The notes: generated by a model not told the origin, from the sequence alone. A DNA stretch of 64,000 nt from Hyalangium minutum (GCF_000737315.1 NZ_JMCB01000013.1:62001-126000), one strand, 5' to 3'. Shown: positions 39,832-53,705, counted from the stretch's first letter. Program-made: numbers and translations.

Positions 39832-41157
39832 ATGGAGCTCATCTGCATTGGGCTGTCGCACCAGACCGCTCCCCAGGATGTGCGCGGACGGCTCGCACTG
39901 GAGAAGCAGGGCCAGATGGAGCTGCTCCAGCGCCTGGCGCAGGCCCCCACCGAGGCCTTGCTCATCTCCACCTGCAACCGGGTGGAGCTCTATGTGATGT
40001 CTCCGGACACGGCCCAGTCGGCCCACCGCGCCCGGGAGGAGCTGAGCCGCGTGGGCGGGGCCGAGACGCTGTCCCACCTCTATGAGCACCATGGGGCCGG
40101 TGCGCTGGAGCACCTGTTCCGCGTGGCCTCCAGCCTGGAGTCCATGGTGCTGGGCGAGGCGCAGATCCTCGGTCAGGTGAAGGAGTCCTTCGAACTGGGG
40201 CAGAGCGTCGGCGCGGTGCGCGGCGGGCTCACGCGCGTGTGCGCGGCGGCGTTCACCTGCGCCAAGCGCGCGCGCAACGAGACGGCGATTGGCCGCGCGG
40301 CCACCTCCATGGCCTCGGCGGCGGTGGCGCTGGCCACCAAGGTGTTCGATCAGCTGTCGGACAAGACGGCGGTGGTGATCGGCGCGGGCGAGATGGGCGA
40401 GCTGGCGGCGAAGCACCTGAAGCAGGCGAAGATCGGTCGGCTCATCATCACCAACCGGACGCTGGCCCGCGCGCAGGCGCTGGCGGAGAAGCTGGAGGGT
40501 GCGACGGCCCGTCCCCTCGAGGACCTGAGCGCGCTTCTGAAAGAGGCGGATGTGGTGGTGTGCGTGACGGGCGCTCAGGAGCCGCTGCTGACGAAGGAGA
40601 ACGTGGGCGCGGTGGGCCGGGCGCGCCGGTTCCGGCCGCTGTTCCTGGTGGACCTGTCAGTGCCTCGGAACATCGCGCCCGAGGTCTCCGAGCTGGACTG
40701 GGTGACGTCCTTCAACGTGGATGACATCCAGAAGTTCGTCGAGAAGAACGCGGCCGCGCGAGCCGAGGGCGCGCAGCAGGCCGGCGTCATCGTCATCCAG
40801 GAGGTGTCGCGCTTCATCCAGGACCGGGCGGTGCGCGAGGGCGTGCCGGTGCTGGCGCGGCTGCGGCAGCGGGCCGAGCAGATCGCCAAGGCCGAGGTGG
40901 AGAAGACACTGGCGGCGATGGGCGATGGGCTCACCGAGAAGCAGCGCAAGAGCATCGAGGCCATGGGCCGCGCCATCGTCAACAAGCTGCTGCACGAGCC
41001 CACCGCGAAGCTGCGCGCCGTGGGGCCCGAGAAGGAAGACAGCCACCGGCTCGCGGGCGCCGCGGCCGAGCTGTTCGGGCTGATCGATGAGCCCGCTCCG
41101 AATCCCTCGGAGCCCGAGGGACCCACGGCCGCCGTGGCCCATGGAGGCAAGCGATGA
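39832..41157 (+). CDS. hemA: Glutamyl-tRNA reductase
   Basis: [62 protein letters not shown]. Confidence 0.97.
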
Positions 41158-42098
41158 CCCGCGCGGTGCGGATTGCTACCCGTCAGAGCCCGCTCGCACT
41201 GTGGCAGGCCCGCCACGTGGCGGCGCTGCTCAGGTCCCACCACACAGGGCTCGAGGTGTCCCTGGTGGAGATGACTACAGAGGGCGACCGGTTCCTCTCG
41301 GCGCCGCTGTCCGCCGTGGGCGGCAAGGGCCTGTTCGTGAAGGAGATCGAGCAGTGCTTGATCGATGGGCGCGCGGACATCGCCGTGCACAGCCTCAAGG
41401 ACATGACGTCCGTGCTGCCCGAGGGCCTGATGCTCGCGGCGGTGCCGGTGCGCGAGGACCCGCGCGACGCGTTCTGCAGCCCCACGGGGCTCACGCTGGA
41501 CACGCTGCCCCAGGGCGCGAAGGTGGGGACCTCCTCGCTGCGCCGCAGTTGCATCCTGCGCTCGCGGCGGCCGGATCTGGAGATCGTCAGCCTGCGCGGC
41601 AACGTGCAGACGCGGCTGCAGAAGACGAGAGAGATGGGGCTGGCGGGCGCGATGCTGGCCAGCGCGGGGCTCCGCCGTCTGGGCCTGGAGAAGGAGATCA
41701 CCGAGGTGGTGCCGACCGAGGTGAGTCTGCCGGCGGTGGGGCAGGGCGTGCTGGCGATCCAGTGCCGCACGAACGATGCAGAGGTCCGGGCGCTGCTCGC
41801 GCCGCTGGAGGATGCGGTGACGCGCATCGCCGTGACAGCCGAGCGGGCGCTCCTGGCGAAGCTGGAGGGTGGCTGCACGGTGCCGATGGCGGGCCACGCC
41901 ACGGTGAAGGCCGGCGAGGTGCACCTGCGCGGCTTCGTGGGGCGTCCGGACGGCTCGAGGGTGGTGGCCGGCGAGGTCCGCGGCCCGGTGAGCAACGCCC
42001 ACGCGCTGGGGGATGCGCTCGCGGATGAACTGCTCTCGCGCGGCGCCCAGGAGATCCTCCGCGACTTTGGGCGTACCGGGTTTGTTCCGAACTCCTGA
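41154..42098 (+). CDS. hemC: Porphobilinogen deaminase
   Basis: [52 protein letters not shown]. Confidence 0.97.
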
Positions 42099-42212
42099 GG
42101 AGGCAGAGCCTCAGAACCAGAGAGCGGCTGCCTCCACTTGAGTGGAACCGGTGAGCGGCTACTTGGGGCGCGGCTATCATGCCCGGCAGGATGGCGCCTG
42201 TGGGAGGGCCTC

Positions 42213-42454
42213 ATGAGATGGAAGCCGGTGGTCTGCGCGGTGTGGCTGGTGGGGTAACAGGGTGCCCTCATTCCTTCGGGCGTGGGGGAACCATTGAGCG
42301 CGCCGCAGCCAAAGACACCCGGGAAACCTACGGCCCGCAGTTCCCCCCGTGTACGGAGGAAGTGCGAAAACAACTCTGCCCTATGGGCCAAGACCCCAGC
42401 GCCAAATGCCTGCAGGTGTGTGGCGAAGAACTGGATGAGGGAGAGGACTGGTGA
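42213..42454 (+). pseudogene. Small Cys-containing lipoprotein interrupted by a 1-nt frameshift
   Basis: RBS GGGAGG, ATG 42213 reads MRWKPVVCAVWLVG* (TAA 42255); adding one G to the G4 run 42251-42254 gives ...VWLVGVTGC-PHSFGRGGTIERAAAKDTRE...CLQVCGEELDEGEDW* whose stop overlaps the next GTG start. Confidence 0.6.
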
Positions 42455-43350
42455 AGTGGCGTGGCGTGCTTGTAGCCGGGCTGGGAGGAGCCTTGGTGCT
42501 CCCCCTCGCTTGGCTCGTGTGGGTCGCGCTGTATGCGGCGCCCCAACTTCCAGGCCCTGCCATGGTGAAGCTCGGCCCGGTGCTCACCCACGAGCAGCGC
42601 AGGAGCTTGCGCACATACCACCGTGGCTGCCGCACCACGGCAGACTGCGATCCGCCGCTGGGGTGTCTCGACGACTTACGCTACTTGCGGCGCTTCTGCA
42701 CCGACAGCGAGTGCATGACGGATGGGCAGTGCCCTGAAGGTCATGTCTGCCGTGTCGTGCAGACAGCGAAGGGGCCCTGGCTCAAGCAATGTGTCTTGCT
42801 GGGCGTCCGAGGGGAAGGGGAGCGGTGCTACCAAACACCCCCGCGGACTGTGCAGGCGTGCCGTGACGGGTTGCTGTGCGCGGGAGATGGATGGTGCGGG
42901 CGGCCGTGCCGCCCAGAGCAGGCCGCCAGTTGCCCCGAGGGCTTCTTTTGCGCAGACATAGAGCCGGAGCCCGCATGCTTGCCCACATGCGAGGAGCGGG
43001 GATGTCCGGAGGGGCAGGAGTGCATGCGCGGCAGCCAGGAAGACATTGCCTCCACCTGCGCGGTGGTGCATGGCCACAACTGCCAGAAGAGTTCGTGTCC
43101 TGAGGGCTTCTGGTGCGAGGACTTCCTCATCCCTGCGCGTCCCGGAGAGGCTTGGGTGCGCTGTGCCCAGAGCTGCTTGGAGCCGGATTCGCCTCCGTGC
43201 CCGTCTGGCGAGGTGTGTTCCCTCATCTCCTGTGAGCGTCTTTGCTCCCCGGAGCAGACCGGCGCATGCGGCGAGGGCTTCCACTGCATCCAGGTGCAGG
43301 AGGACGGGCCCTGGCTCTGCAAGCCGGAGTGGTACCGCCCACGCGAGTAG
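42451..43350 (+). CDS. Membrane-anchored cysteine-rich repeat protein
   Basis: N-terminal TM, then many Cys-rich modules (CPEGHVC, CPEGFFC, CPEGQEC, CPEGFWC, CGEGFHC). Confidence 0.85.
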   Translation: MKWRGVLVAGLGGALVLPLAWLVWVALYAAPQLPGPAMVKLGPVLTHEQRRSLRTYHRGCRTTADCDPPLGCLDDLRYLRRFCTDSECMTDGQCPEGHVCRVVQTAKGPWLKQCVLLGVRGEGERCYQTPPRTVQACRDGLLCAGDGWCGRPCRPEQAASCPEGFFCADIEPEPACLPTCEERGCPEGQECMRGSQEDIASTCAVVHGHNCQKSSCPEGFWCEDFLIPARPGEAWVRCAQSCLEPDSPPCPSGEVCSLISCERLCSPEQTGACGEGFHCIQVQEDGPWLCKPEWYRPRE

Positions 43351-43460
43351 TTTCAGGTGAGCGGTGGAACAACCTAGGGGGTGAGGGGATGCACACCCGC
43401 CTCAGGAGGGAGGCGGACGTCTGACGTTCCGTGTAGAGTGAGAGACTCGGGAGGTTGTCC

Positions 43461-44435
43461 GTGTCTCTGTGGCCCGTCCGCGCCGTGCTGGTGCTCGTCC
43501 TGCTGTGGGGGTGGCCTTCACAGGCGCAACCCCGCTCCGAAGAACCTCCGCAGTCCCCGCGGCAGCTGGAGCTTCCGCCGCTTCGGGGCGTTGCCGCTGT
43601 GAATGTGGCACCGGGCATGCCCACGACGCTCCTGTTCAACGCGCCGCTGGACCGGAGCGCGGTGGAGCGCGCGGCCCATGAGCTGGGCCTGGCCCGGGTG
43701 GCCGTGGCGGAGGACACGCTGACGGTGGTGCCCGCTATGGGGGCGCAGGCAGGCACACGGCTGCGGCTGCCGGTGCGGTTCGCGGAAGGCTCCACGCAGG
43801 AGGGCGAGGTCGTGGTGTTCGTCGTGGATCCGCTGAACGCGGAGGCGCACGTGGAGGTGACGCGTCGCATGCGCACCGTCCCCGCCCTGGAAGAGGCGCT
43901 GGCCGCCGAGCGTGCGCGGTCCGCCTCGCAGGCGGCGGAGCTGGCCGCCAGGGACGTGCAGGTGGCGGAGTTGCACGCCGCCCAGGGAGATCTGGCGGGG
44001 CTGATCGAGGCTGGCACTCTGGGGCCGGAAGGCATCTCCGTCCAGCAAGTGCAGACTGACGGTTGGTACCTCGCTCCTGGCTTCCGTGCAGGGACCGCTC
44101 AGCTCTATGTGACCGCCGGGCGCAGGGCCCTGGTCGCGGAGCTCCACCTCCTTGCGGGTGAACGCCCGTGGGCGCCCGCAGGGGCCACGCTGCAACCTGT
44201 GTCGGCTGGAACGCTGGAACGCTGGAACGCACGAGTGGTGCGGCTATTGGGAACAGACGTGATCACGCCCGGTGGCCGAGCCCTCCTCGTGGTGGAGTTT
44301 GAGGTGCCCGTGGGTGGCTTGGCGCAGGAGTACCGGATGACGGTGCGGGAACAAGAGGGGCTGCGGGCGTTCGTGCTTCGGGTTCGCGAGAGCCCGCCTG
44401 GGCGCAGGGGGGAAGCCAGAGGAGGCAGGCCATGA
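43461..44435 (+). CDS. DUF2381-family (myxobacterial paralogous family) secreted protein
   Basis: Signal peptide, VAPGMPTTLLFNAPL, LPVRFAEG, central coiled coil, GLIEAGTL..GI, C-terminal beta domain; stop overlaps kinase start (ATGA). Confidence 0.75.
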   Translation: MSLWPVRAVLVLVLLWGWPSQAQPRSEEPPQSPRQLELPPLRGVAAVNVAPGMPTTLLFNAPLDRSAVERAAHELGLARVAVAEDTLTVVPAMGAQAGTRLRLPVRFAEGSTQEGEVVVFVVDPLNAEAHVEVTRRMRTVPALEEALAAERARSASQAAELAARDVQVAELHAAQGDLAGLIEAGTLGPEGISVQQVQTDGWYLAPGFRAGTAQLYVTAGRRALVAELHLLAGERPWAPAGATLQPVSAGTLERWNARVVRLLGTDVITPGGRALLVVEFEVPVGGLAQEYRMTVREQEGLRAFVLRVRESPPGRRGEARGGRP

Positions 44436-46405
44436 GTCAACACAGGCGGCTCCCTTCGGCGGACGCCGAAGAGGTCCCGGTCCCAGCCGAGCTGCTGCAG
44501 GGAACAGAGGTGAACGGCTTCCGGCTCGTGCGGTATCTGGACCAAGGGGGCTATGGGTGTGTGTGGGTGGCGGAAAACATTCACTGTCCTGGCCAGTACT
44601 GCGCGCTGAAGTTCTGCCTGCACTCACCCGAGGAGGACCCGACGGCGGACGCCCGGGCGCTGCGCGAGGTCCAGTTGCTGCTCCAGGCAGCGCACCCCAA
44701 CGTGCGCGGAGTTCTGGGCCATGGGCGGTGGCCCAACGCGAAGACGGGCATCGTCTACATCATCCTGGAGTGGGTGGAGGGGGCCACGTTGCTGGAGTGG
44801 GCACGCCAGGCCAATCCCTCCTTCCGTCAGGTGGTGCACCTGGCTCAGAAACTCGCGCGGGCGCTCCAAGAGGCCCATGAGCGGCAGGTCATGCACCGCG
44901 ACGTGAAGCCGGACAACGTGCTGGTGCGAGCGGTGGACGGGGAGCCCTTCCTGTCGGACTTCGGGATGGGGCAGACTGAGCGCAGCACCCCGCTCACCTG
45001 GGGCGGAGCCCCCCCTGGCACCCGGAGTTACCTCAGCCCCGAGGCGCTGGCGTTCTCGCCGCGTTGGGGGAAGCGCACCTACCGCTTCCGGCCCGCGGAT
45101 GACTGGTACGCGCTGGGGGTGACGCTCTATCAACTGCTCACGGAGGTGCTTCCGTTTCCGGACGAGGGCATGGGCAGGGAGTCGGTGCGGGGGATGGCGC
45201 TGCGGCAACCCGTTCCTCCGCACCTGCTCAATCCCCGGGTGCCCCTGCCGCTGAGCCGGGTGGTGATGCGGATGCTGAGCAGCCGCCTCCAAGGGCGCTA
45301 CCGCGATGGGAGGGCACTGTGTGAGGCCCTGGAGAGGGGACTTTCAGGGGCGGGTGTCTGGGATACGCCTGTGTATGAGCCCCACCCGCCCCAGCAACAG
45401 GGACAGACACCGACGCAGGAACCCACCCCAGGGGATGGCCCCCCTGCACAAGATGAAGAGGTGGCCTGGAATCACGCCGTCAAGCCGCAGCACGCACTGG
45501 AGGAGCAGCGGCGGGCCGTTGTGCTCAGCCGGCGCGACGCACTGCTGCCACGCCAGGCCAGAGCCTGGGGCCGGGTGGCACGATGGAGCCGGAGGACCCT
45601 GGCGCTGGTGGCGGTGGCCATGATGGCCTGGGTTGCATGGCGCTCGGCAGGGGCTCTGTTCCCTGGCGCCGGGAGCACCCCCGAGCAGGCCCCCCGCTCA
45701 GCTTTGGCTGCCCGGGAAGCGCCTTTTCTTTCACCTGCGGACGAACCGGCCCCAGAGTTTGTTGCGGTATTTCCCTCTCAACCCAGCCTGACGCCTGTCA
45801 CCGCCCGTGCTGAGAAAACTTTGAAGGACGACAGCCCCATGGAGACACCCAAGAGTTCATTGCCGAGCCCGCCTGCTGCCACTTCCCCACGTCCGCGCGG
45901 CGCTGGGGGCGCCCGGAAGGCGGCCTTGTGCGCTGCGGGTGTGATCGCCACGGGCTGCTCAGGCATCCCGTTGCGGCCGTCGGCTCAGGAGTGTCCGCCC
46001 GCAGCCATTCAGAACATGCGGGCGCGGCGCATCGGGGTGAAGCGAGGCATGCAGATCAAACTGGATGTGACCGGTCCTGAGGGAGAAGTCCAACTCAAGG
46101 CGGGACAGAAGGTGGTGAGCGAATCGCGAGACAACACAGGTTTCATAGGTCCCGGTGGGGTTCCCGAGGACGGCACCCTCCTGTACGGCAAGGTGGTCGC
46201 AGGGGGAGAGGGGCTTTTCTTCGTCCGCTATGAGGAGGCGCTCTTTCCGGGCGAATCAGAGAAGGTCCCTATCTGCGCTCACGCCGCTGATGCAGGCACT
46301 AACTGGTATGCGCTCACAGCGGAGCCCGGCTCGACGAACGAGATCTTCACCACCTTGAATAACAGCACCGCCATCTTCTTGCTCCAGTTTCCCGGCGAGC
46401 CGTGA
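44432..46405 (+). CDS. Membrane Ser/Thr protein kinase with Pro-rich linker, internal lipobox and C-terminal extracytoplasmic domain
   Basis: DQGGYGCV, ALK, HRDVKPDN, SDFG, GTRSYLSPE all intact; TM TLALVAVAMMAWVAW; AGVIATGC509; C-terminal GTLLYG..VRYEEALFPG..VPIC. Confidence 0.9.
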   Translation: MSQHRRLPSADAEEVPVPAELLQGTEVNGFRLVRYLDQGGYGCVWVAENIHCPGQYCALKFCLHSPEEDPTADARALREVQLLLQAAHPNVRGVLGHGRWPNAKTGIVYIILEWVEGATLLEWARQANPSFRQVVHLAQKLARALQEAHERQVMHRDVKPDNVLVRAVDGEPFLSDFGMGQTERSTPLTWGGAPPGTRSYLSPEALAFSPRWGKRTYRFRPADDWYALGVTLYQLLTEVLPFPDEGMGRESVRGMALRQPVPPHLLNPRVPLPLSRVVMRMLSSRLQGRYRDGRALCEALERGLSGAGVWDTPVYEPHPPQQQGQTPTQEPTPGDGPPAQDEEVAWNHAVKPQHALEEQRRAVVLSRRDALLPRQARAWGRVARWSRRTLALVAVAMMAWVAWRSAGALFPGAGSTPEQAPRSALAAREAPFLSPADEPAPEFVAVFPSQPSLTPVTARAEKTLKDDSPMETPKSSLPSPPAATSPRPRGAGGARKAALCAAGVIATGCSGIPLRPSAQECPPAAIQNMRARRIGVKRGMQIKLDVTGPEGEVQLKAGQKVVSESRDNTGFIGPGGVPEDGTLLYGKVVAGGEGLFFVRYEEALFPGESEKVPICAHAADAGTNWYALTAEPGSTNEIFTTLNNSTAIFLLQFPGEP

Positions 46406-46576
46406 AGCCCCCGCGCGTCGCCTGCAGCCCAATCTCCCCACTCACAGGGTATGGCGGCTGGCGGCTTTTTCATGTTACTCTCTGGGTATGAAGACGCGGC
46501 AGAACCCCTGAAGTCGTCTTCATGTTGGCCCTCACCCCATGGCCCAGCCGCCGTGGACCTTCCCAGGAGTGCATGC

Positions 46577-47704
46577 ATGCCCACTCGAGCTGCCACCTAT
46601 TCCCTGTCTCCGGAAGCCCCTCGCTTCACCGTGGGCTCGCGTACCTACGCCGCCGTTCGCAGCCTGGGGCCGTACGGCGTGGGGGAGCGCTTCCTCGCGC
46701 GCCCCGTGGACGCTGGGGAGCCGGGAGCGCTGGTGCTGATCCAACGGCTGCATGCCACACCCAGCGAGGGAGATCGCCGGCGGCTGCTGGAGGAAGCGCG
46801 GCTGCTGCGTCTGTTGAATCACCCCAGCATTCCGCGCGTGCTCGCGGTGGCGCCGGGCGCGCAGCGTCCGTGGGTGGCGCTGGAGTATGTGGAGGGCATG
46901 TCCCTGGAGCGGGTATTGAACCGGGCCGTCGTGAGGCGCCAGCCGATGTCGGCGCCGTTCGCGGCCTCTGTCGTCGCCCAGGTGGCGGATGCGCTCCACG
47001 CCGCGCATGGGCTGGAGGATGAGCGCGGGCAGTTGCTCCACCTCGTTCACCGGGACGTCTGTCCGCGCCATATCTTTCTGACCCGCGATGGAGAGGTTCA
47101 GCTCACCGCCTTTGGCGCGGCGTTCACCACGCGTCCAGGGCGTCCTGCCACGCCGGGCCTGCTCGTGAAGGGGACCGGGGAGTACTCGGCGCCCGAGGTC
47201 CTGGTGCACCGGGTGCCGGACGCCCGCGCGGACATCTTCTCCCTGGGGCTCATCTTGCTGGAGCTGCTCAGCAACCGCTATCTGCTGGATCCTTCGGATG
47301 AGGGCGTGCCGCGCGCCCTGCCCGGTCACCTGGCGAAGCTGGAGAACAGACTCCGGGCCGAGGATCCGGGCTGGGCGCCGCCCGCGCACCTGGCGGCCCG
47401 TGCCGAGCACTTGCGGCCAGAGGACGTGGAGCGTGTGACTGCCGGGGCGCCTGCCGCACTGCGCGCCGTGGTGCTCCGGGCCCTGCGGCTCCAGCCGGAG
47501 GAGCGGTACGCTTCCGCCTTGACCCTGCGGGATGAGCTGCACGGCTTCCTCGCGCAGCAGGCCCAGCCCTACGGCAAAGAGGAGCGGCTGGCGGAACTGC
47601 AGAGGCGGATCTCCACACGGGGGTATCGCCGGGAAGGCGTGGAGACGAGCCAGGAGCCGGTGCCTGCAGAGTTCCGGCGCCCCCGCGCTGGAATGGAGGG
47701 CTGA
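46577..47704 (+). CDS. Ser/Thr kinase-fold protein with degenerate catalytic motifs (pseudokinase)
   Basis: HRDVCPRH, GTGEYSAPE, DIFSLG retained, but VxxK Lys replaced by Gln (LVLIQRL) and DFG replaced by AFG (QLTAFGAA); AGGAG RBS before ATG 46577. Confidence 0.8.
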   Translation: MPTRAATYSLSPEAPRFTVGSRTYAAVRSLGPYGVGERFLARPVDAGEPGALVLIQRLHATPSEGDRRRLLEEARLLRLLNHPSIPRVLAVAPGAQRPWVALEYVEGMSLERVLNRAVVRRQPMSAPFAASVVAQVADALHAAHGLEDERGQLLHLVHRDVCPRHIFLTRDGEVQLTAFGAAFTTRPGRPATPGLLVKGTGEYSAPEVLVHRVPDARADIFSLGLILLELLSNRYLLDPSDEGVPRALPGHLAKLENRLRAEDPGWAPPAHLAARAEHLRPEDVERVTAGAPAALRAVVLRALRLQPEERYASALTLRDELHGFLAQQAQPYGKEERLAELQRRISTRGYRREGVETSQEPVPAEFRRPRAGMEG

Positions 47705-47788
47705 CAGCCCCCATCGCTTGTGGGTGGGCAACTCCCCACCCATGTCGATGCGCCGTTTGGCAGCGACACCTGCGGCGCGGCTGGGCGC

Positions 47789-48667
47789 TCAGTGCATCGG
47801 TCCGGTGGGAGGCATGGGTTCGAAGACGATCAGCTGCGGGCTGTAGAGGAACCCTTCATCCGCGCGTGGCTGACGGAACTTCCACTGCAACTCTTCGTCC
47901 ACCAGCATGTCCCCCGCTTTGAATCGCACCCCCGTGGAGTGCATCGTGTCGAAGGTGCTCCTGAAGAGCCGATAGATGTTCCGGACATCCTGGTCTCTGT
48001 CGATGTGCAGGGCCAGGTCTGGCATGTTGAGCCGTGGGGCGCCGCAGGTGCGAACCCAGAGCCCTTCGTGGCCCTCCACCTGCAGTGTCACGAAGCCAAT
48101 AAACAAGGTCATCCACGGCAAGGTGCTCAGCACCTGCTCCAGCTCTTCTCCAGGCTGGGGAGCGAGCCGCACCACCGGACAGGAGGTGCACGCGTTCGGG
48201 TTCAGCACGACGGAGGCCCCCAAGGGCAGCAGCCCCACCGCGATCTTCGCCAGGGCTCGGTATTGCTCCAAGGGCGACCGCTCCTGGCCCTTGTAGATGA
48301 GGATGGCATGCGCGGTGTGCGCATGGGCCTGCTCCTTCCACGCATCTTCGTAGAGCAGCGCGGTGTTGACCGTCTGCTCCAGCAGGTCCGCGGGCGCGGG
48401 CACGCTCAGGAACCCCACATACACGGTGTGCTGTGCCCACTGCACCAGGGCCAGTTGCTCCATCAATCCCACGCTGGGGCCTTCGATGGGGATCCTCATC
48501 TCCACGCGGACGTGCGCCAGAGACGGGTGCACCTTCTGGAGCATGCGCGTGAAGGTGTCCGCGAAGGGCCAGACGGCGCGCGGGAACAAGACTTGAAGGT
48601 TCAAAGGCGGCTCTTGCTGGGAGGCAAGCGCCCTGTTCCTGGCTCGGAGTAACTTTCGAAGTCCCAC
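47789..48667 (-). CDS. DUF4261-like protein
   Basis: HTAHAILIY, GLWVRTCGAPRLNMPDLA, FKAGDML resemble the DUF4261 pattern; GGAGG RBS before GTG 48667. Confidence 0.5.
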   Translation of the reverse strand: MGLRKLLRARNRALASQQEPPLNLQVLFPRAVWPFADTFTRMLQKVHPSLAHVRVEMRIPIEGPSVGLMEQLALVQWAQHTVYVGFLSVPAPADLLEQTVNTALLYEDAWKEQAHAHTAHAILIYKGQERSPLEQYRALAKIAVGLLPLGASVVLNPNACTSCPVVRLAPQPGEELEQVLSTLPWMTLFIGFVTLQVEGHEGLWVRTCGAPRLNMPDLALHIDRDQDVRNIYRLFRSTFDTMHSTGVRFKAGDMLVDEELQWKFRQPRADEGFLYSPQLIVFEPMPPTGPMH

Positions 48668-48799
48668 GGATCCTCCCCATGAAGGCGGGCCGCTCGTGCC
48701 CCACCTGTTGGGTGGGGAGGAACGCAGAAATCACGCGCGAAGTCCAGGGGCAGAATCCGCTTCAAGGCGCTCTGGTGACCTGGGCTAGAGTCCGCGCCC

Positions 48800-49561
48800 G
48801 TGGAACGGCGACTCGAAGGCAAGCGCGTCCTGGTCACGCGCCCGAAAGAGCGGGTGGAAGAGCTGTGCTTCCTCCTGGAGGACGAGGGTGCGGAGGTGCT
48901 CAGCCTCCCCTTGCTGGAGTTGCGTCCTCCCGAGGATCCCCGGCCGCTCATGGCCGCTGCGGAGTCCATTCAGCGCTACCGGTGGGTGGTGTTCGCCAGC
49001 CCCTCGGCTGTGGAGGCGTTGATGGAGGCCTTGCGCGAGGCGGGCACGGCGGACCTCATGGGCCGCGTGCGCGTGGCGGCGGTGGGGCCACGCACGGCCC
49101 GTGTGGCCGAGAGCTACGGCTTGAAGGTGGCCGCCGAGCCCACCGAGTCCACGGGCCTGGGGCTCTTCGAGGCGCTCCGGTCCGAGCTTCACCCGGACGA
49201 CGAGGTGCTCCTGCCCGCCGCCGAGGAGGGGCGCCGCGAGCTGGAGCTGGCGCTGCGTGAGCAAGGCGTGCGTGTCACCCGGGTGACGGCGTACCGGACC
49301 ACGCCCGCCGCGTTGCCTCCCGAGGCCCAGGAGCTGCTGCGCACCGCTCCGCCGGACGTGGTGCTCTTCGCCTCGCCGCGCACGGTGGAGGTGTTCCTGG
49401 AGGCCGCCGGCCGCGAGCGGCTGGAGCAGGCCCGGGTGGTGGCCATTGGCCCGACGACTGCGGGCGCGCTGGCCCGGCTGGGCATCGAGGTGGCTGCGGT
49501 GGCCGAGCAGCCCACCCCTGAAGGGCTCGTGGACGCCGCGAGCCGAGCCATTCACGGGTAA
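48800..49561 (+). CDS. hemD: Uroporphyrinogen-III synthase
   Basis: VLVTRP, WVVFASPSAV, AAVGPRTA, VTAYRT, FASPRTV, VAIGPTTA. Confidence 0.93.
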   Translation: MERRLEGKRVLVTRPKERVEELCFLLEDEGAEVLSLPLLELRPPEDPRPLMAAAESIQRYRWVVFASPSAVEALMEALREAGTADLMGRVRVAAVGPRTARVAESYGLKVAAEPTESTGLGLFEALRSELHPDDEVLLPAAEEGRRELELALREQGVRVTRVTAYRTTPAALPPEAQELLRTAPPDVVLFASPRTVEVFLEAAGRERLEQARVVAIGPTTAGALARLGIEVAAVAEQPTPEGLVDAASRAIHG

Positions 49562-49573
49562 GCTGGGGCCACC

Positions 49574-50119
49574 ATGGGTTCTCTCCGCCTCCTCGGGCTG
49601 ATGATCGTTCTCGGCCTGCCTGCGCTCGCCGGGGCCTCGGGTCTGCCCCCGCAGACGCTGGCCGAGCTGGCCGGGCCATCGGATCGGATCGTCCTCGCGC
49701 GCGTGGTGGACCAGCGCGTCAATGTGCCAAATGGCAACGTGAGACAGATGACCACCATCTCCCGGTTGGAGGTGCTGGAGGAGTACCGTGGGCAGGGACC
49801 GCGCGCGCTGGAGCTGGTGCAGCTGGGCGGACGCAGCGGCTTGTGGGAGTCGCACCTGGCGGGAGATGCGAAGATCGCCGCGGGAGAGACGGCGCTGATG
49901 TTCCTCCGCTGCCCGGATCCGAAGGCGGTGGAGCGGTGCGTGCTGGTAGGGCAGGGCGCCGGGAAGCACACGGTGACGGAGGGCGCCCAGGGGCGGCGGG
50001 AGGTGGAGCTCACCGCGCGGGTGAAGGGCGGCCCGGTCCGGCGGTCCTTGGATGAAGTCGTGGACGAGATCCGGCGGGCGACTCTGCCCCCGGCGCAGCA
50101 GGAGAGGGGCAAGCGATGA
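49574..50119 (+). CDS. Exported hypothetical protein of the type usually found N-terminal to or upstream of matrixin-like proteases
   Basis: Signal peptide; TLAELAGPSDRIVLARVVD..RLEVLEEYRG..LVQLGG..GETALMFL pattern; stop overlaps protease start. Confidence 0.7.
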   Translation: MGSLRLLGLMIVLGLPALAGASGLPPQTLAELAGPSDRIVLARVVDQRVNVPNGNVRQMTTISRLEVLEEYRGQGPRALELVQLGGRSGLWESHLAGDAKIAAGETALMFLRCPDPKAVERCVLVGQGAGKHTVTEGAQGRREVELTARVKGGPVRRSLDEVVDEIRRATLPPAQQERGKR

Positions 50120-51897
50120 ACCGCAAGCTGCAACGGATGGCAGTGCTCGCGATGATGGCCTGGAGTGCCACGGCCTCCGCGCAGCAGTACGAGTATCTCG
50201 GCTTCAAGATGCTCAACAACCGGGACTACCCGTTCGCCTATTACCTGGACTCGCGCGCCAGCAACCCGGCGGGCATTGCCCTCTCGCAGGTGGAGGCCGC
50301 CACCACCGCGGCCTTCCAGACCTGGGAGAACGTGGCCTGTGCGTACCCGGATTTCCAATACAAGGGCTACAGCAGCACGGCCGCGATCCCGGATGTGCGC
50401 AGCACCACGGACGCGTTCAACGTCAGCACCATCTGGATCACCAGCTCGGCCGACCCCTACTACAACACGGCGCTCGCGGGCGGGAACTCGCCTTCCGGCT
50501 CTGTCCCGCTCACCTACGCGGGCTACCTCTACCAGTGTGACATCTTCATCAACGCGGTGACCTTCCGGTGGACGACGCTGGCCGGCACGGATCCACGCGA
50601 CAACTTCCGCGATCTGCAGACGGCGCTGACACATGAGGTGGGCCACTGCATGGGGCTCGGGGATGCGTACGCGCCCAACTCGGCGGTGATGTACCCGGAG
50701 TTCCCGGCGGGCCAGACCAAGCGCGTGCTCGATGCCCAGGACGTGACGCAGGTCTGCAGCTACCTGCCGGAGGACGGAGCGGTGGGCTCGCCGTGCTCGG
50801 ACAGCGATCCGTGTACCAACGGCCTCGCCTGCATCCCCTACAACAGCGGCAACGTGTCCTATAAGTACTGCTCCAAGGGCTGCACCGGCAACGATCCAGC
50901 CGAGTGCCCCAGCCCGTTCGTGTGCCAGACGTCCTCGGCCGTCGCTGGCTCCACGAAGGCCTGCCTCGCCGTCCCCAACCAGGCGGTGACGCAGGTGGGC
51001 AAGGAGTGCGGCACCAACGCGCAGTGTGGCTCGGCCGTGGCCATCTGCAAGACGCCCGAGCAACTGCCCTCTGGGGGGACCGCCTGGGTGGATGGCTACT
51101 GCCAGCAGGGGTGCAACGCGGGCTCCTCGGCCAGCACCTGCCCGGCGGGCTCGGTGTGCGTCAACACGAGCGCGGGCACGGATGATAGCTGCCTCAAGCG
51201 GTGCCGGCCCGGCACGGGCGACTGCCGCGCGGGCTACACCTGCTCGCCACTGGCCGAGGGAGATGCCTGCGTCCCCAACTGCTACAACGACTTGGACTGC
51301 AATGGCGGCACGACGGCCACCAACTATATCTGCCGCACGTGCGATCACGTCTGCATCGAGAACAAGCAGACGGGGCGCTCCGTGGGAGACGGGTGCCAGC
51401 GCAGCGAGGAGTGCGGCCCGGGGCAGATCTGCCTCTTCATCAACAACCACCCGGAGGGCATCTGCTCGCAGCCGTGCTCCACCGCGGCGTGTGGCTGCCC
51501 CGGGGGCTCCACGTGCAAGCAGGTGGGACCGGACCTCATGTGCATGAGGGACTGCGCCGCGGGCACCTGCGCCAGCCCGGCGCAGTGCAACCCCGTGGGC
51601 TCCACGTACTCGTGCACGGCCCGGTGCCGCACGCGCAATGACTGCCCCACGGGCTTCGAGTGCTATCCGGAGGGCTGCATCGATCCCACGAAGGTCCCGG
51701 ATGCGGGCTGCACGCTCTGCGGCACCGATGCCGGAACGAACCCGCCTCCGCCTCCGCCTCCGGATGGTGGCACGGGAGGGGGAGATGGAGGCCCCGGCGG
51801 GTGTGGCTGCGGCCAGGCCCCCACGTCGGCGATGCTGCTGTCGGCGCTCGCGCTGCTGCTGGTCGCTGGAGGTCGCCGCTCTTGGCCTCGCCGGTAA
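50116..51897 (+). CDS. Metzincin (matrixin-like) metalloprotease with Cys-rich repeats and MYXO-CTERM sorting signal
   Basis: HEVGHCMGLGD, Met-turn SAVMYP, many Cys modules, tail PPPPPPDGG..GGCGCGQAPTSAMLLSALALLLVAGGRRSWPRR. Confidence 0.88.
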   Translation: MNRKLQRMAVLAMMAWSATASAQQYEYLGFKMLNNRDYPFAYYLDSRASNPAGIALSQVEAATTAAFQTWENVACAYPDFQYKGYSSTAAIPDVRSTTDAFNVSTIWITSSADPYYNTALAGGNSPSGSVPLTYAGYLYQCDIFINAVTFRWTTLAGTDPRDNFRDLQTALTHEVGHCMGLGDAYAPNSAVMYPEFPAGQTKRVLDAQDVTQVCSYLPEDGAVGSPCSDSDPCTNGLACIPYNSGNVSYKYCSKGCTGNDPAECPSPFVCQTSSAVAGSTKACLAVPNQAVTQVGKECGTNAQCGSAVAICKTPEQLPSGGTAWVDGYCQQGCNAGSSASTCPAGSVCVNTSAGTDDSCLKRCRPGTGDCRAGYTCSPLAEGDACVPNCYNDLDCNGGTTATNYICRTCDHVCIENKQTGRSVGDGCQRSEECGPGQICLFINNHPEGICSQPCSTAACGCPGGSTCKQVGPDLMCMRDCAAGTCASPAQCNPVGSTYSCTARCRTRNDCPTGFECYPEGCIDPTKVPDAGCTLCGTDAGTNPPPPPPPDGGTGGGDGGPGGCGCGQAPTSAMLLSALALLLVAGGRRSWPRR

Positions 51898-53705
51898 CCG
51901 CCACCAGCCGCTCCCAGGCGGACTTCAGCACGATGTTCGTGCTCGAGGCGCTCGTCCATCAGGGCCTGCTCACCGCGCAGCAGGCCCAGGAGATCCTCGC
52001 GCGCGAGTCCGCCGCCCGCGCCCGCGTCCTCAAGGCCAAGGCGCAGGGCGGCTCCAAGGAGGCGGCACGCTATGACGTGTCGCCGGTGGAGCTCATCGCG
52101 GCCTTCCAGGTGCCGCTGTCCGAGGGCCGCGGCGTGCTGGACGAGGATCGGGTGACGGAGGCGGCCGCTCGCGCCGCCGGCATGCCGTACCGGAAGATCG
52201 ACCCGCTCAAGCTGGACATGGCGCTGGCCACGCGTACGGTGTCCCGGCCCTTCGCGCAGAAGCACGCGCTGCTGCCGCTGGAGCGCACGCAGCAGGGGCG
52301 GCTCGTGGTGGCGGTGGCCAACCCGTTCGATCGCGAGCTGTTCGAGAACCTCTACCGGCTGGCGGGTCTGCCCATCGAGCCGGTGCTGTCGTCCAAGTCG
52401 GACATCCTCAAGTCCATCACGGAGATCTACGGTTTCAAGAAGACGCTGGCGCGCGCGGCGGATGACTTCGCCACCGGGCCGTCGGTCGCCAACTTCGAGC
52501 AGCTGGTGTCGCTCAGCGGCACGCAAGAGCTGGACGCGGGCGACAAGCCAGTGGTGCAGGCGGTGGACTACCTGCTGCGCTACGCCTTCGACAACCGCGG
52601 GTCGGATATCCACATCGAGCCCAAGCGCGCCCAGTCGCACGTGCGTCTGCGCATCGACGGCGTGCTGCACACCGTCTACACCCTGCCGGCGGGGGTCCAC
52701 GCGCCCATCGTCTCGCGCGTGAAGATGCTCTCGCGCATGGACATCTCCGAGAAGCGCAAGCCGCAGGACGGCCGCATCAAGACAGAGCGCGAGGGCCGCG
52801 AAGTGGAGCTCCGCGTCTCCACGCTGCCCACTGCGTTCGGCGAGAAGGTGGTCATCCGTATCTTCGATCCGGAGACGCTGGTGCAGGACATTGCCCAGCT
52901 GGGCTTCGAGCCGGATGAGAAGGATTCATTCGAGTCCTGGATCGACCAGCCGCACGGGCTCATCCTGGTGACGGGCCCCACGGGCAGCGGCAAGACGACG
53001 ACGCTGTACTCGGCGCTGAAGGCGGTGGCGGGCCCGGACGTGAACGTCACCACGATCGAGGATCCGATCGAAATGGTGTGGGAGGGCTTCAACCAGGTGC
53101 AGGTTCAGCCCAAGGTGGGCTTGGACTTCGCCGGGGCGCTGCGCCACATCCTCCGCCAGGACCCGGACGTCATCATGGTGGGCGAGATCCGTGACGCGGA
53201 GACGGCGGAGAACGCCATTCAGTCCGCGCTCACGGGCCACCTGGTGCTCTCCACGCTGCACACCAACGACGCGATCGGCGCCGTGGCGCGCATGAAGGAT
53301 CTCGAGGTGCCGGCGTTCCTGCTCTCGCAGAGCCTCGTGGGGCTGATGGCCCAGCGCCTGCTGCGGCGCAACTGTGTCCATTGCGTACAGGAGACCACGC
53401 TGACGCCGGACGAGCTGACGTCGCTGATGGTGCCCATTCCGCTGCTGCCTGGAGGCGTGAGGCTGCTCAAGGGCGCGGGATGTGTGCGTTGCCGGGGCAC
53501 AGGCTATTTCGGACGTACGGGAGTCTTTGAAATCGTCAGCATCAACGCGGAGCTGAAGGACCTCATCAACCGTGGTGCGACGCACTACGAGCTGGTGGAG
53601 GCGGCTCGGCGCGCAGGGATGCGCACCCTTCGGGAGGCGGGTGTGCGCAAACTCGCGCAAGGACTCACCACCTTTGAAGAGGTGATGCGAATGACGGCTG
53701 TCTGA
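51882..53705 (+). CDS. GspE/PulE/PilB-family secretion ATPase
   Basis: SDIHIEP, RKPQDGR, Walker A GPTGSGKT, TIEDPIE, LRQDPDVIMVGEIRD, STLHTN, CVHC/CVRC; start is TTG 51882 (GGAGG upstream) or ATG 51934. Confidence 0.92.
   Translation: MASPVTATSRSQADFSTMFVLEALVHQGLLTAQQAQEILARESAARARVLKAKAQGGSKEAARYDVSPVELIAAFQVPLSEGRGVLDEDRVTEAAARAAGMPYRKIDPLKLDMALATRTVSRPFAQKHALLPLERTQQGRLVVAVANPFDRELFENLYRLAGLPIEPVLSSKSDILKSITEIYGFKKTLARAADDFATGPSVANFEQLVSLSGTQELDAGDKPVVQAVDYLLRYAFDNRGSDIHIEPKRAQSHVRLRIDGVLHTVYTLPAGVHAPIVSRVKMLSRMDISEKRKPQDGRIKTEREGREVELRVSTLPTAFGEKVVIRIFDPETLVQDIAQLGFEPDEKDSFESWIDQPHGLILVTGPTGSGKTTTLYSALKAVAGPDVNVTTIEDPIEMVWEGFNQVQVQPKVGLDFAGALRHILRQDPDVIMVGEIRDAETAENAIQSALTGHLVLSTLHTNDAIGAVARMKDLEVPAFLLSQSLVGLMAQRLLRRNCVHCVQETTLTPDELTSLMVPIPLLPGGVRLLKGAGCVRCRGTGYFGRTGVFEIVSINAELKDLINRGATHYELVEAARRAGMRTLREAGVRKLAQGLTTFEEVMRMTAV

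What the first reader, a model, noticed from the sequence alone, without database searches (positions are those of the whole stretch)
43461..46405. Candidate minimal T4SS-core-like system: VirB9-like DUF2381 protein coupled to a kinase-VirB10-like fusion
Seen: a secreted two-domain beta protein with a coiled-coil linker (VAPGMPTTLLF..DTLTVVP..LPVRF) whose stop overlaps the start of a protein built as active kinase - Arg-rich - TM - Pro-rich linker - C-terminal domain containing VPEDGTLLYGKV..FFVRYEEALFPG. Established: VirB10/TrbI proteins have the layout cytoplasmic N-terminus - TM - Pro-rich linker - beta domain with an IPxGSxLxG..RxxVxWxxxxxPDG signature, and they assemble with VirB9/TraK and lipoprotein VirB7 into the outer-membrane core ring. 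Inference: a repurposed core complex with no VirB4/VirB11/VirD4/relaxase nearby, which either exports or packages the kinase as an effector, or transduces an outer-membrane signal to it. I cannot check whether this has already been published.
Basis: partly seen in the sequence, partly recalled or inferred. Interest (0 to 1): 0.9.

Follow-up and report, generated by a model that had tools for sequence, protein, structure and literature searches.

The report
Kinase fused to T4SS-core-like domain
A myxobacterial two-gene module pairs a secreted protein predicted to fold like the type IV secretion part VirB9 with a membrane Ser/Thr kinase whose outer end is predicted to fold like VirB10, so parts of a secretion machine appear to have been reused as an envelope sensor.

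Summary
A DUF2381/TIGR02268 gene (43461-44435) overlaps by ATGA the start of a 657-aa Hanks kinase (44432-46405). The kinase is built as kinase, Arg-rich segment, TM helix, Pro-rich linker and a conserved C-terminal domain.

- The AlphaFold model of the kinase C-terminal domain retrieves only VirB10-type chains from the PDB (DotG, CagY, Xanthomonas VirB10, TraF, TraB, ComB10).
- A profile-profile comparison aligns its motif with the VirB10 signature (P 3e-5).
- The three best PDB matches of the DUF2381 model are VirB9-type chains (TraK, apparently DotH, TrwF), but no sequence-level signal supports this.

The pair is adjacent in all 12 loci examined. Neighbourhoods differ among them, and none carries T4SS ATPase, VirB8 or relaxase genes. 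The VirB10-like domain lacks the outer-membrane antenna helices, so secretion is unlikely.

Best reading: a trans-envelope receptor kinase built on a domesticated VirB9/VirB10 scaffold.

Also found: a complete lipoprotein precursor embedded in the kinase ORF (possible internal start, lipobox, invariant Cys), and a downstream pseudokinase.

STPK-DUF2381 clustering in Myxococcus is already published. I found no paper making the T4SS connection.

The parts
43461..44435 (+). DUF2381/TIGR02268 gene, a VirB9-like secreted protein. An alternative TTG start lies at 43455.
   Evidence: Pfam and NCBIfam hits above cut-off. GGGAGG lies 6 nt before GTG 43461. The start agrees with 24 homologues.
43461..43526 (+). 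Sec signal peptide; cleavage predicted after SQA, no lipobox
   Evidence: Hydropathy peak at residues 1-20. A24 and Q25 are invariant.
43560..43865 (+). N-terminal beta-sandwich domain of DUF2381 (residues about 36-137)
   Evidence: AF2 strands E36-137, block pLDDT 69-91. Foldseek single-domain match to 7mue_AH.
43881..44009 (+). Helical A/E/R/Q-rich linker (residues 143-185)
   Evidence: AF2 helices H143-177 and H180-185. Plasmid VirB9s have a linker of similar composition between their two domains.
44037..44384 (+). C-terminal beta-sandwich domain of DUF2381 (residues about 195-310)
   Evidence: AF2 strands E195-310, block pLDDT 69-93.
44432..46405 (+). Receptor-type Hanks Ser/Thr kinase with a VirB10-like C-terminal domain (657 aa). 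The ATGA overlap joins it to the DUF2381 stop.
44519..45361 (+). Cytoplasmic kinase domain with intact catalytic motifs (K60, HRD155, DFG176, SPE202)
   Evidence: Pfam Pkinase E 1.7e-28; motif scan.
45596..45664 (+). Transmembrane helix (residues about 389-411), preceded by an Arg-rich segment
   Evidence: Kyte-Doolittle 19-residue mean 1.4-1.58. The flank RQARAWGRVARWSRR carries the positive charges expected on the cytoplasmic side.
45683..45913 (+). Pro/Ala/Ser-rich periplasmic linker (residues 418-494), the counterpart of the VirB10 Pro-rich region
   Evidence: 15 Pro, 14 Ala and 9 Ser in 77 residues.
45824..45841 (+). Candidate internal translation start: AAGGA followed 10 nt later by ATG 45839-45841 (M470)
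   Evidence: The column is 100% V/M/L in 50 sequences. GTG, TTG or ATG is found in every locus with DNA, and a rare GAA is conserved in the upstream AAGGAAG. ORFs in L024 and L026 start here.
45914..45958 (+). Embedded lipoprotein-signal-like segment RKAALCAAGVIATGC with invariant Cys509
   Evidence: Second hydropathy peak at about residue 496. The lipobox Cys is invariant in 50 of 50 sequences.
45983..46402 (+). VirB10/TrbI-like beta-barrel domain (residues about 518-657) without antenna helices; C521 and C615 invariant
   Evidence: AF2 pLDDT above 90 over most of the core. Foldseek matches are VirB10-type chains only. hhalign P 3.4e-5 against VirB10.
46451..47704 (+). Downstream kinase-like gene, a probable pseudokinase. 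The likely start is ATG 46577, judged from the L004 orthologue.
   Evidence: Pkinase E 7.4e-23. It has no VAIK lysine; HRDVCPRH replaces HRDxKxxN, and AFG replaces DFG. Present in L004, L006, L008, L009 and L027.

Best explanation
This is a trans-envelope receptor Ser/Thr kinase module built from a domesticated type IV secretion outer-membrane-core pair.

Shown:
- The first gene encodes a Sec-exported protein with two beta-sandwich domains, predicted to fold like VirB9.
- The second, tightly coupled gene encodes a membrane protein. Its N-terminal Hanks kinase (all catalytic motifs intact) faces the cytoplasm.
- Its TM helix, Pro-rich linker and C-terminal beta-barrel reproduce the layout of VirB10, and the barrel is predicted to have the VirB10 fold.

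Inferred:
- In the periplasm the VirB10-like barrel binds the VirB9-like protein, as VirB10 binds VirB9. The complex is probably oligomeric and lies under or at the outer membrane.
- It may be lipid-anchored through the conserved lipobox cysteine, which would take the place of a VirB7 lipoprotein.
- A change in the envelope or at the outer membrane is passed down the Pro-rich linker, or changes clustering. This switches kinase autophosphorylation.
- The signal then goes to cytoplasmic partners. Candidates are the adjacent pseudokinase here, and the HTH-Xre regulators in the sister architecture.

The module has no ATPase and no antenna pore, so it signals and does not secrete.
For: Fold of the kinase C-terminal domain:
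- AF2 model pLDDT 84.6, core above 90.
- Foldseek against the PDB: ranks 1-14 are T4SS outer-membrane-complex entries (9ngw_A, 6x6s_AY, 6gyb_C, 3jqo, 7spc, 7okn) at probability 0.99-1.0 and TM about 0.46-0.48. ComB10 is rank 16. Other folds fall below probability 0.2.
- TraF, CagY, Xanthomonas VirB10 and ComB10 are confirmed as VirB10 relatives present in those entries. DotG and TraB are assigned from knowledge of the complexes.

Sequence of that domain:
- hhalign of the 50-sequence profile against 13 plasmid VirB10s gives probability 72% and P 3.4e-5, over PxGTLLFGxV...RFFIRYTEAQLPxGERVPIC against the VirB10 GTxLxGEY...GQxRVFVxWxRLxTPxG block.
- Cross controls give P 0.08-0.6.

DUF2381:
- AF2 pLDDT 76, most of the domain cores 84-93.
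- The three best PDB matches are 7spb_C1 (TraK, E 2e-8), 7muc_AH (E 6e-7) and 8rt6_B (E 6e-6). One search names 7spb_C1 as TraK. One search shows entry 8rt6 holds TrwF. The DotH assignment of 7muc_AH rests on chain naming and knowledge of that complex.

Layout: Arg-rich segment, TM helix, 77-residue Pro-rich linker.

Gene order:
- VirB9-like then VirB10-like with overlapping stop and start, as in pTi virB9/virB10.
- virB9 lies directly upstream of virB10 in 11 of 12 other plasmids; one has a small ORF between them.

Linkage:
- DUF2381 lies next to a gene with this C-terminal domain in the window and in L001-L009, L024 and L026. Examined neighbourhoods differ, apart from the syntenic L004.
- 14 of 28 DUF2381 homologues share a contig length with a kinase homologue.

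Other points:
- The C-terminal-domain family has 630 representatives at E <= 1e-3. Named members are Myxococcota: Hyalangium, Stigmatella, Archangium, Corallococcus, Pyxidicoccus and Vitiosangium.
- C521 and C615 are invariant, which fits a periplasmic disulfide (inference).
- M. xanthus clusters of this kind change expression in phase variation, and insertions in them alter spore representation (PMC3986340; bioRxiv 10.64898/2026.08.28.747804).
Against: - No direct evidence that the two proteins bind, form rings or reach the outer membrane.
- The DUF2381-VirB9 link rests only on Foldseek matches of a predicted model. TM-scores are low (0.21-0.26) because the two domains are oriented differently. 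Profile comparisons are not significant (P 0.02-0.2). Beta-sandwiches are common folds.
- Foldseek E-values for the VirB10-like domain are moderate (8.6e-4 to 5e-2).
- Pfam TrbI and CagX models do not match, even at E 10.
- The hydrophobic lipobox segment sits awkwardly in a full-length protein whose first TM helix already puts the linker in the periplasm.
- The input signal and the substrates are unknown.
Confidence: 0.5

Rival explanations
1. The two forms act together. The kinase gene also yields, from a conserved internal start (M470 here), a free lipoprotein of about 19 kDa that carries the VirB10-like barrel. This lipoprotein is sorted to the outer membrane and assembles with DUF2381. 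The full-length kinase joins or senses that assembly through its own copy of the barrel. This refines the best explanation and does not exclude it.
For: - One linker column is V, M or L in 50 of 50 sequences, while its neighbours are 20-60% conserved.
- The codon is GTG in 7 of 7 loci where the residue is Val (GTG is 68% of Val codons), TTG in L007 (14% of Leu codons), and ATG in the window and L025.
- AAGGA(A/C)G lies 8-10 nt upstream. Its Glu is the rare GAA in 5 of 5 loci (GAA is 18% of Glu codons).
- A K/R-rich n-region, a 10-12-residue h-region and an xxGC lipobox with invariant Cys follow.
- In L024 and L026 the ORF begins at this GTG, with in-frame stops upstream and no kinase in any frame, and DUF2381 follows.
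Against: - The motif KE[DG]SPVKTPQ could be conserved for a protein-level reason.
- The n-region (about 30 residues) is long for a signal peptide.
- Most short database members are fragments from contigs of about 1 kb.
- L024 and L026 are short metagenome contigs.
- The sequences are related, so the codon counts are not independent.
Confidence: 0.3
2. The T4SS resemblance is only a relic or a generic fold. The kinase senses through its C-terminal beta-barrel on its own. DUF2381 is an independent periplasmic protein, for example a ligand-binding or regulatory partner with no VirB9-like role. No core-complex-like assembly forms.
For: - There is no sequence-level DUF2381-VirB9 signal.
- Other beta-sandwich proteins (FlaG/FlaF, adaptin appendage domains) follow closely in the Foldseek list.
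- The antenna and all other T4SS parts are missing.
- The Stigmatella copy of DUF2381 lacks the N-terminal domain.
Against: - Two adjacent genes independently retrieve the two partner subunits of one complex as their best structural matches.
- They do so in the canonical gene order with translational coupling.
- The pairing survives in many different neighbourhoods and in both gene orders.
Confidence: 0.2
3. It is a minimal secretion or packaging device that exports the kinase as an effector.
For: Only the fold resemblance to T4SS core parts.
Against: - No VirB4, VirD4, VirB6 or VirB8 homologue appears in the window or in the other loci searched. The one VirB11-superfamily hit is a gene with an MshEN domain (type II secretion or pilus type), found only in the window and its syntenic L004.
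- The barrel lacks the antenna helices that form the outer-membrane pore.
- The kinase domain lies on the cytoplasmic side of a TM anchor in the same polypeptide.
Confidence: 0.04
4. It is an envelope-surveillance or defence sensor, for example one that detects phage, conjugation or attack by a neighbour and answers through kinase signalling.
For: - The sister architecture in Archangium violaceum lies between SNF2/PglZ genes and an AHH nuclease-Imm11 pair, and carries two HTH-Xre genes.
- The kinase domains match PADLOC PD-T4-6 and Mad6 kinase models.
Against: - The PADLOC matches are generic kinase-domain matches.
- DUF2381 has no PADLOC hit.
- The window copy sits in a conserved housekeeping heme-biosynthesis neighbourhood with flat base composition.
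Confidence: 0.08

Closest known systems
T4SS outer-membrane core complex VirB7/VirB9/VirB10 (pKM101 TraN/TraO/TraF, R388 TrwH/TrwF/TrwE, F TraV/TraK/TraB, Dot/Icm DotH/DotG)
   Same: - Predicted folds of both proteins.
- The cytoplasmic N-terminus, TM helix, Pro-rich linker and beta-barrel layout of the VirB10-like protein.
- A signal peptide plus two sandwich domains with a charged helical linker in the VirB9-like protein.
- Gene order and coupling.
- The VirB10 signature block.
   Different: - The short cytoplasmic N-terminus of VirB10 is replaced by a complete Hanks kinase.
- No antenna helices.
- No separate VirB7 gene; instead a lipobox sits inside the VirB10-like protein.
- No ATPases, VirB6/8, pilins or relaxase.
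- Sequence similarity lies below Pfam detection.
- The family is expanded as chromosomal paralogues in Myxococcota.
Receptor-type Hanks Ser/Thr kinases with extracytoplasmic sensor domains (PknB/StkP with PASTA repeats, PknD with a beta-propeller)
   Same: An N-terminal cytoplasmic kinase, a juxtamembrane segment, a single TM helix and an extracytoplasmic C-terminal domain. Activation by clustering or dimerisation is the established model for that class (my knowledge).
   Different: - The sensor domain here is a VirB10-like barrel on a long Pro-rich stalk.
- It comes with a dedicated, co-translated, secreted VirB9-like partner.
- The organism has two membranes, so the module could bridge to the outer membrane.
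Myxococcus xanthus STPK / PKc-like / DUF2381 / HTH-Xre gene clusters linked to yellow-tan phase variation (PMC3986340; bioRxiv 10.64898/2026.08.28.747804)
   Same: The same gene families and arrangement: an STPK followed by a kinase-like gene, with a DUF2381 neighbour. L008 and L009 reproduce the HTH-Xre version.
   Different: Those papers report expression and transposon-fitness data. They treat the proteins as kinases and hypothetical proteins. They give no structural or T4SS interpretation of DUF2381 or of the kinase C-terminus.
VirB10 and TonB as trans-envelope energy or signal transducers
   Same: An inner-membrane anchor, a Pro-rich periplasm-spanning segment and a C-terminal domain that contacts outer-membrane components. 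VirB10 is known to change conformation in response to cytoplasmic ATP use (my knowledge).
   Different: Here the proposed direction of information flow is inward, to a kinase. No energising ATPase or ExbBD-like partner is linked.

Membership tests
VirB10/TrbI family | Bitopic layout: cytoplasmic N-terminus, one TM helix, Pro-rich region, C-terminal domain | tested here: met
   Hydropathy peak at residues 389-411 with an Arg-rich flank on its N-terminal side. The linker has 15 Pro in 77 residues. The folded C-terminal domain spans residues 518-657.
VirB10/TrbI family | C-terminal beta-barrel fold of VirB10 | tested here: met
   On a predicted model, Foldseek ranks 1-14 and 16 are VirB10-type chains at probability 0.85-1.0 and TM 0.39-0.48.
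VirB10/TrbI family | Sequence match to the family profile (Pfam TrbI) | tested here: not met
   No TrbI hit for the window protein or for 23 family members, even at E 10. hhalign against 13 VirB10s gives only a local 45-column match, at probability 72% and P 3.4e-5.
VirB10/TrbI family | Two-helix antenna projection that forms the outer-membrane pore | tested here: not met
   The AF2 model has a single short helix (residues 523-531). Only about 37 residues, all strand or coil, follow the signature block.
VirB10/TrbI family | Encoded with the T4SS ATPases and inner-membrane parts (VirB4, VirB11, VirD4, VirB6, VirB8) | tested here: not met
   tblastn of pTi VirB1-B11 and a coupling-protein fragment finds only a T2SSE-type ATPase at 52962-53303, about 6.5 kb downstream of the kinase stop. 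None appears in the gene tables of eight related loci.
VirB9/TrbG/CagX/TraK family | A secreted protein with N- and C-terminal beta-sandwich domains joined by a linker | tested here: met
   Signal peptide and AF2 domain structure.
VirB9/TrbG/CagX/TraK family | Fold similarity to solved VirB9-type subunits | tested here: met
   On a predicted model, the top three of 1911 matches are 7spb_C1 (TraK) at E 2e-8, 7muc_AH (apparently DotH) at 6e-7 and 8rt6_B (apparently TrwF) at 6e-6. TM-scores are low, 0.21-0.26.
VirB9/TrbG/CagX/TraK family | Sequence or profile similarity to VirB9 | tested here: not met
   Searches of PDB sequences with the protein and with its profile find nothing. hhalign against 13 VirB9s gives P 0.02-0.6. 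There are no CagX or TraK Pfam hits at E 10.
VirB9/TrbG/CagX/TraK family | Gene directly upstream of, and coupled to, the virB10 homologue | tested here: met
   ATGA overlap at 44432-44435. The same order is seen in pTi (a 4-nt overlap), in F (traK-traB) and in 11 of 12 other plasmids. L008, L009, L024 and L026 have the reverse order.
VirB9/TrbG/CagX/TraK family | Forms a ring with VirB10 and a VirB7 lipoprotein | not testable with these tools
No multimer modelling or biochemistry was possible.
DUF2381 / TIGR02268 | Score above the curated cut-off of the family models | tested here: met
   Pfam 114.5 bits against 29.2. NCBIfam 99.3 bits against 76.15.
Hanks-type (eukaryotic-like) Ser/Thr protein kinase, catalytically competent | Pkinase domain with the VAIK lysine, HRDxKxxN, DFG and APE-type motifs | tested here: met
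   Pkinase E 1.7e-28. ALK60, HRDVKPDN155-162, DFG176 and SPE202 are present. The downstream 417-aa ORF fails this test (no VAIK lysine, HRDVCPRH, AFG).
Bacterial lipoprotein precursor (embedded module) | Start codon, a positively charged n-region, an h-region and a lipobox with Cys | tested here: inconclusive
   All the sequence elements are present and conserved. Whether this start is used, and whether the Cys is lipidated, cannot be shown from sequence.

The most novel reading that the evidence does not exclude
A T4SS outer-membrane core complex was domesticated in myxobacteria into a ring- or cluster-forming trans-envelope receptor. VirB9-like DUF2381 and VirB10-like barrels would assemble beneath the outer membrane. 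Some barrels would be free lipoproteins made from an internal start in the kinase gene; others would be tethered to Hanks kinases. The assembly would gather kinase domains at the inner membrane, so that events at the outer membrane or at cell contacts are read out as phosphorylation. The paralogous modules would feed decisions such as phase variation and sporulation.
Probability: 0.3. Interest if true: 0.85.

Novelty: new variant of a known kind. Interest (0 to 1): 0.72.

Why it matters
- It gives a structural and mechanistic hypothesis for a paralogous myxobacterial family (DUF2381/TIGR02268) of unknown function, and for the uncharacterised C-terminal domain found in a family of more than 600 representative sequences, most of them kinase-length.
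- To my knowledge it would be the first case of T4SS core-complex parts reused for signalling instead of transport, and of a Hanks kinase wired to a structure that could span the envelope of a bacterium with two membranes.
- It makes the M. xanthus STPK/DUF2381 clusters, already tied to phase variation and developmental fate, directly testable. The tests are binding, localisation, kinase activity, and one or two products from one gene.
- The possible nested lipoprotein gene would be an interesting case of dual coding by internal initiation.

Tried and rejected
- **Word-indexed homologue search** with the C-terminal 174 residues alone found nothing. The full-length search and an exhaustive HMM search succeeded.
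- **Sequence searches of PDB chains** with DUF2381, its profile and the kinase C-terminus returned only chance hits.
- **Genome scan.** The genome-contig scan with the DUF2381 profile returned only 3 loci. I used exact-protein look-ups instead.
- **Profile comparison of DUF2381 with VirB9.** hhalign was run whole and per domain, with extra divergent members added. It was not significant. The best alignment is in register over the first strands but only at P 0.08.
- **Pfam at E 10** found no TrbI, CagX or TraK hit. One isolated VirB7 hit (E 0.014) is probably only signal-peptide similarity.
- **PADLOC** gave only generic kinase matches.
- **Promoter and terminator scan** of 43200-48900 found nothing.
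- **Short family members** first looked like standalone lipoproteins. Most turned out to be fragments from contigs of about 1 kb. Only L024 and L026 stand.
- **P0247** looked like a DUF2381-barrel fusion but is a deletion chimera that still carries the end of the kinase domain.
- **The myxobacterial kinome paper** (PMC2572974) is not held.
- **Three plasmid accessions** (BR000038, AE007871, AP001918) are not in the collection.

Full report
**Observation.** The window is myxobacterial-type DNA of 65-72% G+C. The closest relatives of its proteins are from Hyalangium.

- The DUF2381 ORF runs from 43455/43461 to 44435. It passes the Pfam DUF2381 and NCBIfam TIGR02268 cut-offs.
- Homologues and a GGGAGG box favour the GTG at 43461 as its start.
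- Its TGA overlaps the ATG at 44432 of a 657-aa ORF, which GGAGG precedes by 6 nt.
- The database's own call for that protein is 631 aa, which would correspond to a start at GTG 44510. The residues upstream of that GTG are conserved in homologues.
- The kinase has intact catalytic motifs, an Arg-rich segment, a TM helix at about residues 389-411, a 77-residue linker with 15 prolines, and a C-terminal domain conserved in 49 homologues with three invariant cysteines.

**Structure of the kinase C-terminus.**

- An AlphaFold2 model of residues 484-657, built on a 50-sequence alignment, is confident (pLDDT 84.6, core above 90). It shows a beta-barrel with one short helix.
- Foldseek against the PDB gives T4SS outer-membrane-complex entries at ranks 1-14: the Dot/Icm dome and 3DVA map, the H. 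pylori complex, the Xanthomonas core complex, pKM101 3jqo, and the F-plasmid inner ring. Probability is 0.99-1.0 and TM about 0.46.
- ComB10 is rank 16. Every other fold falls below probability 0.2.
- A sequence search with an IncN VirB10 confirms that TraF, CagY, Xanthomonas VirB10 and ComB10 are the VirB10 relatives in those entries. DotG and TraB are assigned from knowledge of the complexes.
- For an independent test I collected 13 plasmid VirB9/VirB10 pairs and ran hhalign. The C-terminal-domain profile matches the VirB10 profile at probability 72% and P 3.4e-5.
- The cross controls give P 0.08-0.6.
- Pfam's TrbI model does not see the domain.
- After the signature block only about 37 residues of strand and coil remain, so the two-helix antenna that forms the T4SS outer-membrane pore is absent.

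**Structure of DUF2381.**

- The model (pLDDT 76, most of the domain cores 84-93) has a signal peptide, a beta-sandwich, a 35-residue helix plus a short one, and a second beta-sandwich.
- The three best of 1911 PDB matches are 7spb_C1 (E 2e-8), 7muc_AH (6e-7) and 8rt6_B (6e-6).
- Sequence searches name 7spb_C1 as TraK and show that entry 8rt6 holds TrwF/VirB9. 7muc_AH, and the periplasmic-ring match 7mue_AH, appear to be DotH, judged from chain naming and knowledge of that complex.
- TM-scores are low because the two domains sit differently.
- Generic sandwiches (FlaG, adaptin appendages) follow from E 3e-4.
- No sequence-level method links DUF2381 to VirB9.
- Plasmid VirB9s carry a charged linker rich in A, E, R, Q and K between their two domains, like the DUF2381 helix.
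- I therefore rate the VirB10-like assignment at about 0.85 and the VirB9-like assignment at about 0.7.
- What lifts both is that two adjacent genes independently retrieve the two partner subunits of one complex. They do so in the canonical order and with the stop-start overlap seen for virB9-virB10 in pTi.

**Linkage and distribution.**

- DUF2381 lies directly next to a gene carrying this C-terminal domain in the window and in L001-L009, L024 and L026.
- L004 is the syntenic orthologue, between hemC and hemD.
- L005 (next to trypsin-like genes), L006 (Stigmatella) and L007 (Archangium) are paralogous or orthologous pairs in unrelated neighbourhoods.
- L008 (Archangium violaceum) and L009 (Vitiosangium) show a second order: STPK, DUF2381, kinase-like gene, then two HTH-Xre genes.
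- Fourteen of 28 DUF2381 homologues sit on contigs of the same length as a kinase homologue.
- An exhaustive profile search finds 630 representatives of the C-terminal domain at E <= 1e-3.
- Every one of the longer members I scanned carries an N-terminal kinase domain. Named members are all Myxococcota.
- None of the loci, nor the window, encodes VirB4, VirD4, VirB6 or VirB8.
- The only VirB11-superfamily hit, at 52962-53303, lies in a gene whose L004 orthologue carries an MshEN domain. It is absent from the paralogous loci.

**An embedded lipoprotein precursor.**

- Just before the barrel every homologue has a K/R-rich stretch, a hydrophobic run of 10-12 residues and xxGC with an invariant Cys (C509). 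This is the anatomy of a lipoprotein signal peptide.
- About 35-40 residues upstream, in the otherwise variable linker, the block KE[DG]SP[V/M/L]KTPQ is conserved. The V/M/L column is 50 of 50.
- In the DNA the codon is GTG in 7 of 7 loci where the residue is Val, TTG in L007, and ATG in the window (45839) and L025.
- AAGGA(A/C)G lies 8-10 nt upstream. Its Glu is the rare GAA in 5 of 5 loci, against 18% usage in these genes.
- In two short metagenome contigs (L024, L026) the ORF starts at this GTG, with in-frame stops upstream and no kinase in any frame. DUF2381 follows.
- Most other short family members are contig-end fragments.
- So an internal start that yields a free VirB10-like lipoprotein is plausible (about 0.3) but unproven. 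At the least, the segment records a fusion between a kinase and a lipoprotein gene.
- It would also supply the lipid anchor that VirB7 provides in a T4SS.

**Mechanism.**

- Shown: an exported VirB9-like protein; a bitopic, catalytically competent kinase with VirB10 topology and fold; obligate genetic pairing; and the absence of energising and pore-forming parts.
- Inferred: the barrel binds DUF2381 in the periplasm as VirB10 binds VirB9, probably as an oligomer under the outer membrane.
- Also inferred: the state of the envelope controls clustering or conformation of the kinase through the Pro-rich stalk. Output goes to the adjacent pseudokinase, which has no VAIK lysine, HRDVCPRH and AFG, or to Xre regulators in the sister modules.
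- Secretion of the kinase is very unlikely.

**Literature.**

- In M. xanthus, clusters of an STPK followed by a kinase-like gene are strongly regulated in yellow-tan phase variation (PMC3986340).
[quoted passage not shown] It reports that insertions in MXAN_3182 and MXAN_4374 are enriched in spores.
- Searches for DUF2381, TIGR02268, VirB10 with Myxococcus and kinase, VirB10-like with protein kinase domain, and VirB9 with myxobacteria found no paper making the T4SS connection.
- So the clustering is known, and the structural reading appears new within the library searched.

**Verdict.** This is a real, conserved module. It is best filed as a new variant: a receptor Hanks kinase whose sensor is a domesticated VirB9/VirB10 pair. 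It is not a member of the T4SS, because several defining features were tested and not met.

Noticed in passing
window 46451-47704 (+), likely start 46577: The gene after the kinase is a kinase-like protein that lacks the VAIK lysine, has HRDVCPRH in place of HRDxKxxN and AFG in place of DFG. It is probably a pseudokinase. It recurs after the kinase in L004, L006, L008, L009 and L027, and it matches the 'PKc-like' genes of M. xanthus phase-variation clusters.
   Followed up: partly
window 45824-45958 (+): A complete lipoprotein-precursor-like module is embedded in the kinase ORF. It consists of an SD-like AAGGA, ATG 45839, a K/R-rich n-region, an h-region, and a lipobox with invariant Cys509. 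It shows nucleotide-level conservation in relatives, including start-capable codons and a rare GAA.
   Followed up: yes
window 39832-49561: The module, together with an upstream Cys-rich secreted protein (42451-43350), is inserted between hemA-hemC (39832-42098) and hemD (48800-49561). The same insertion is present in the 65%-identical orthologous locus L004.
   Followed up: partly
window 47705-48799, minus-strand ORF 47789-48667: The window has about 1.1 kb between the pseudokinase and hemD that L004 lacks (120 nt there). It holds a 292-aa minus-strand ORF with a weak DUF4261 match (E 9e-4, below the cut-off).
   Followed up: no
L008 6001-11146; L009 6001-11073: A second conserved architecture: STPK (655-672 aa, same C-terminal domain), DUF2381, kinase-like gene, then two HTH-Xre genes. 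In Archangium violaceum it lies between SNF2/PglZ genes and an AHH nuclease-Imm11 pair, which looks like a defence or mobile island.
   Followed up: partly
L006 5339-5998: The Stigmatella DUF2381 next to the orthologous kinase lacks the N-terminal sandwich. It keeps only the signal peptide, a spacer and the C-terminal domain.
   Followed up: no
P0247 (503 aa, metagenome): A chimera made of the DUF2381 N-terminal domain joined to the end of the kinase domain, the TM helix, the linker and the barrel. It is probably a deletion across the gene junction.
   Followed up: partly
window 50116-51897 and 51660-53705 (+): A Cys-rich protein resembling the myxosortase-dependent metalloproteases (M10 matrixin motif) is followed by a T2SSE/MshEN-type secretion ATPase. 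These are part of the syntenic neighbourhood and are not linked to the module in paralogous loci.
   Followed up: no
window 44432 vs 44510: The public gene call for the kinase is 631 aa, which would correspond to a start at GTG 44510. That call would hide the ATGA overlap with DUF2381. The SD box and the conservation of the N-terminal 26 residues favour ATG 44432.
   Followed up: yes
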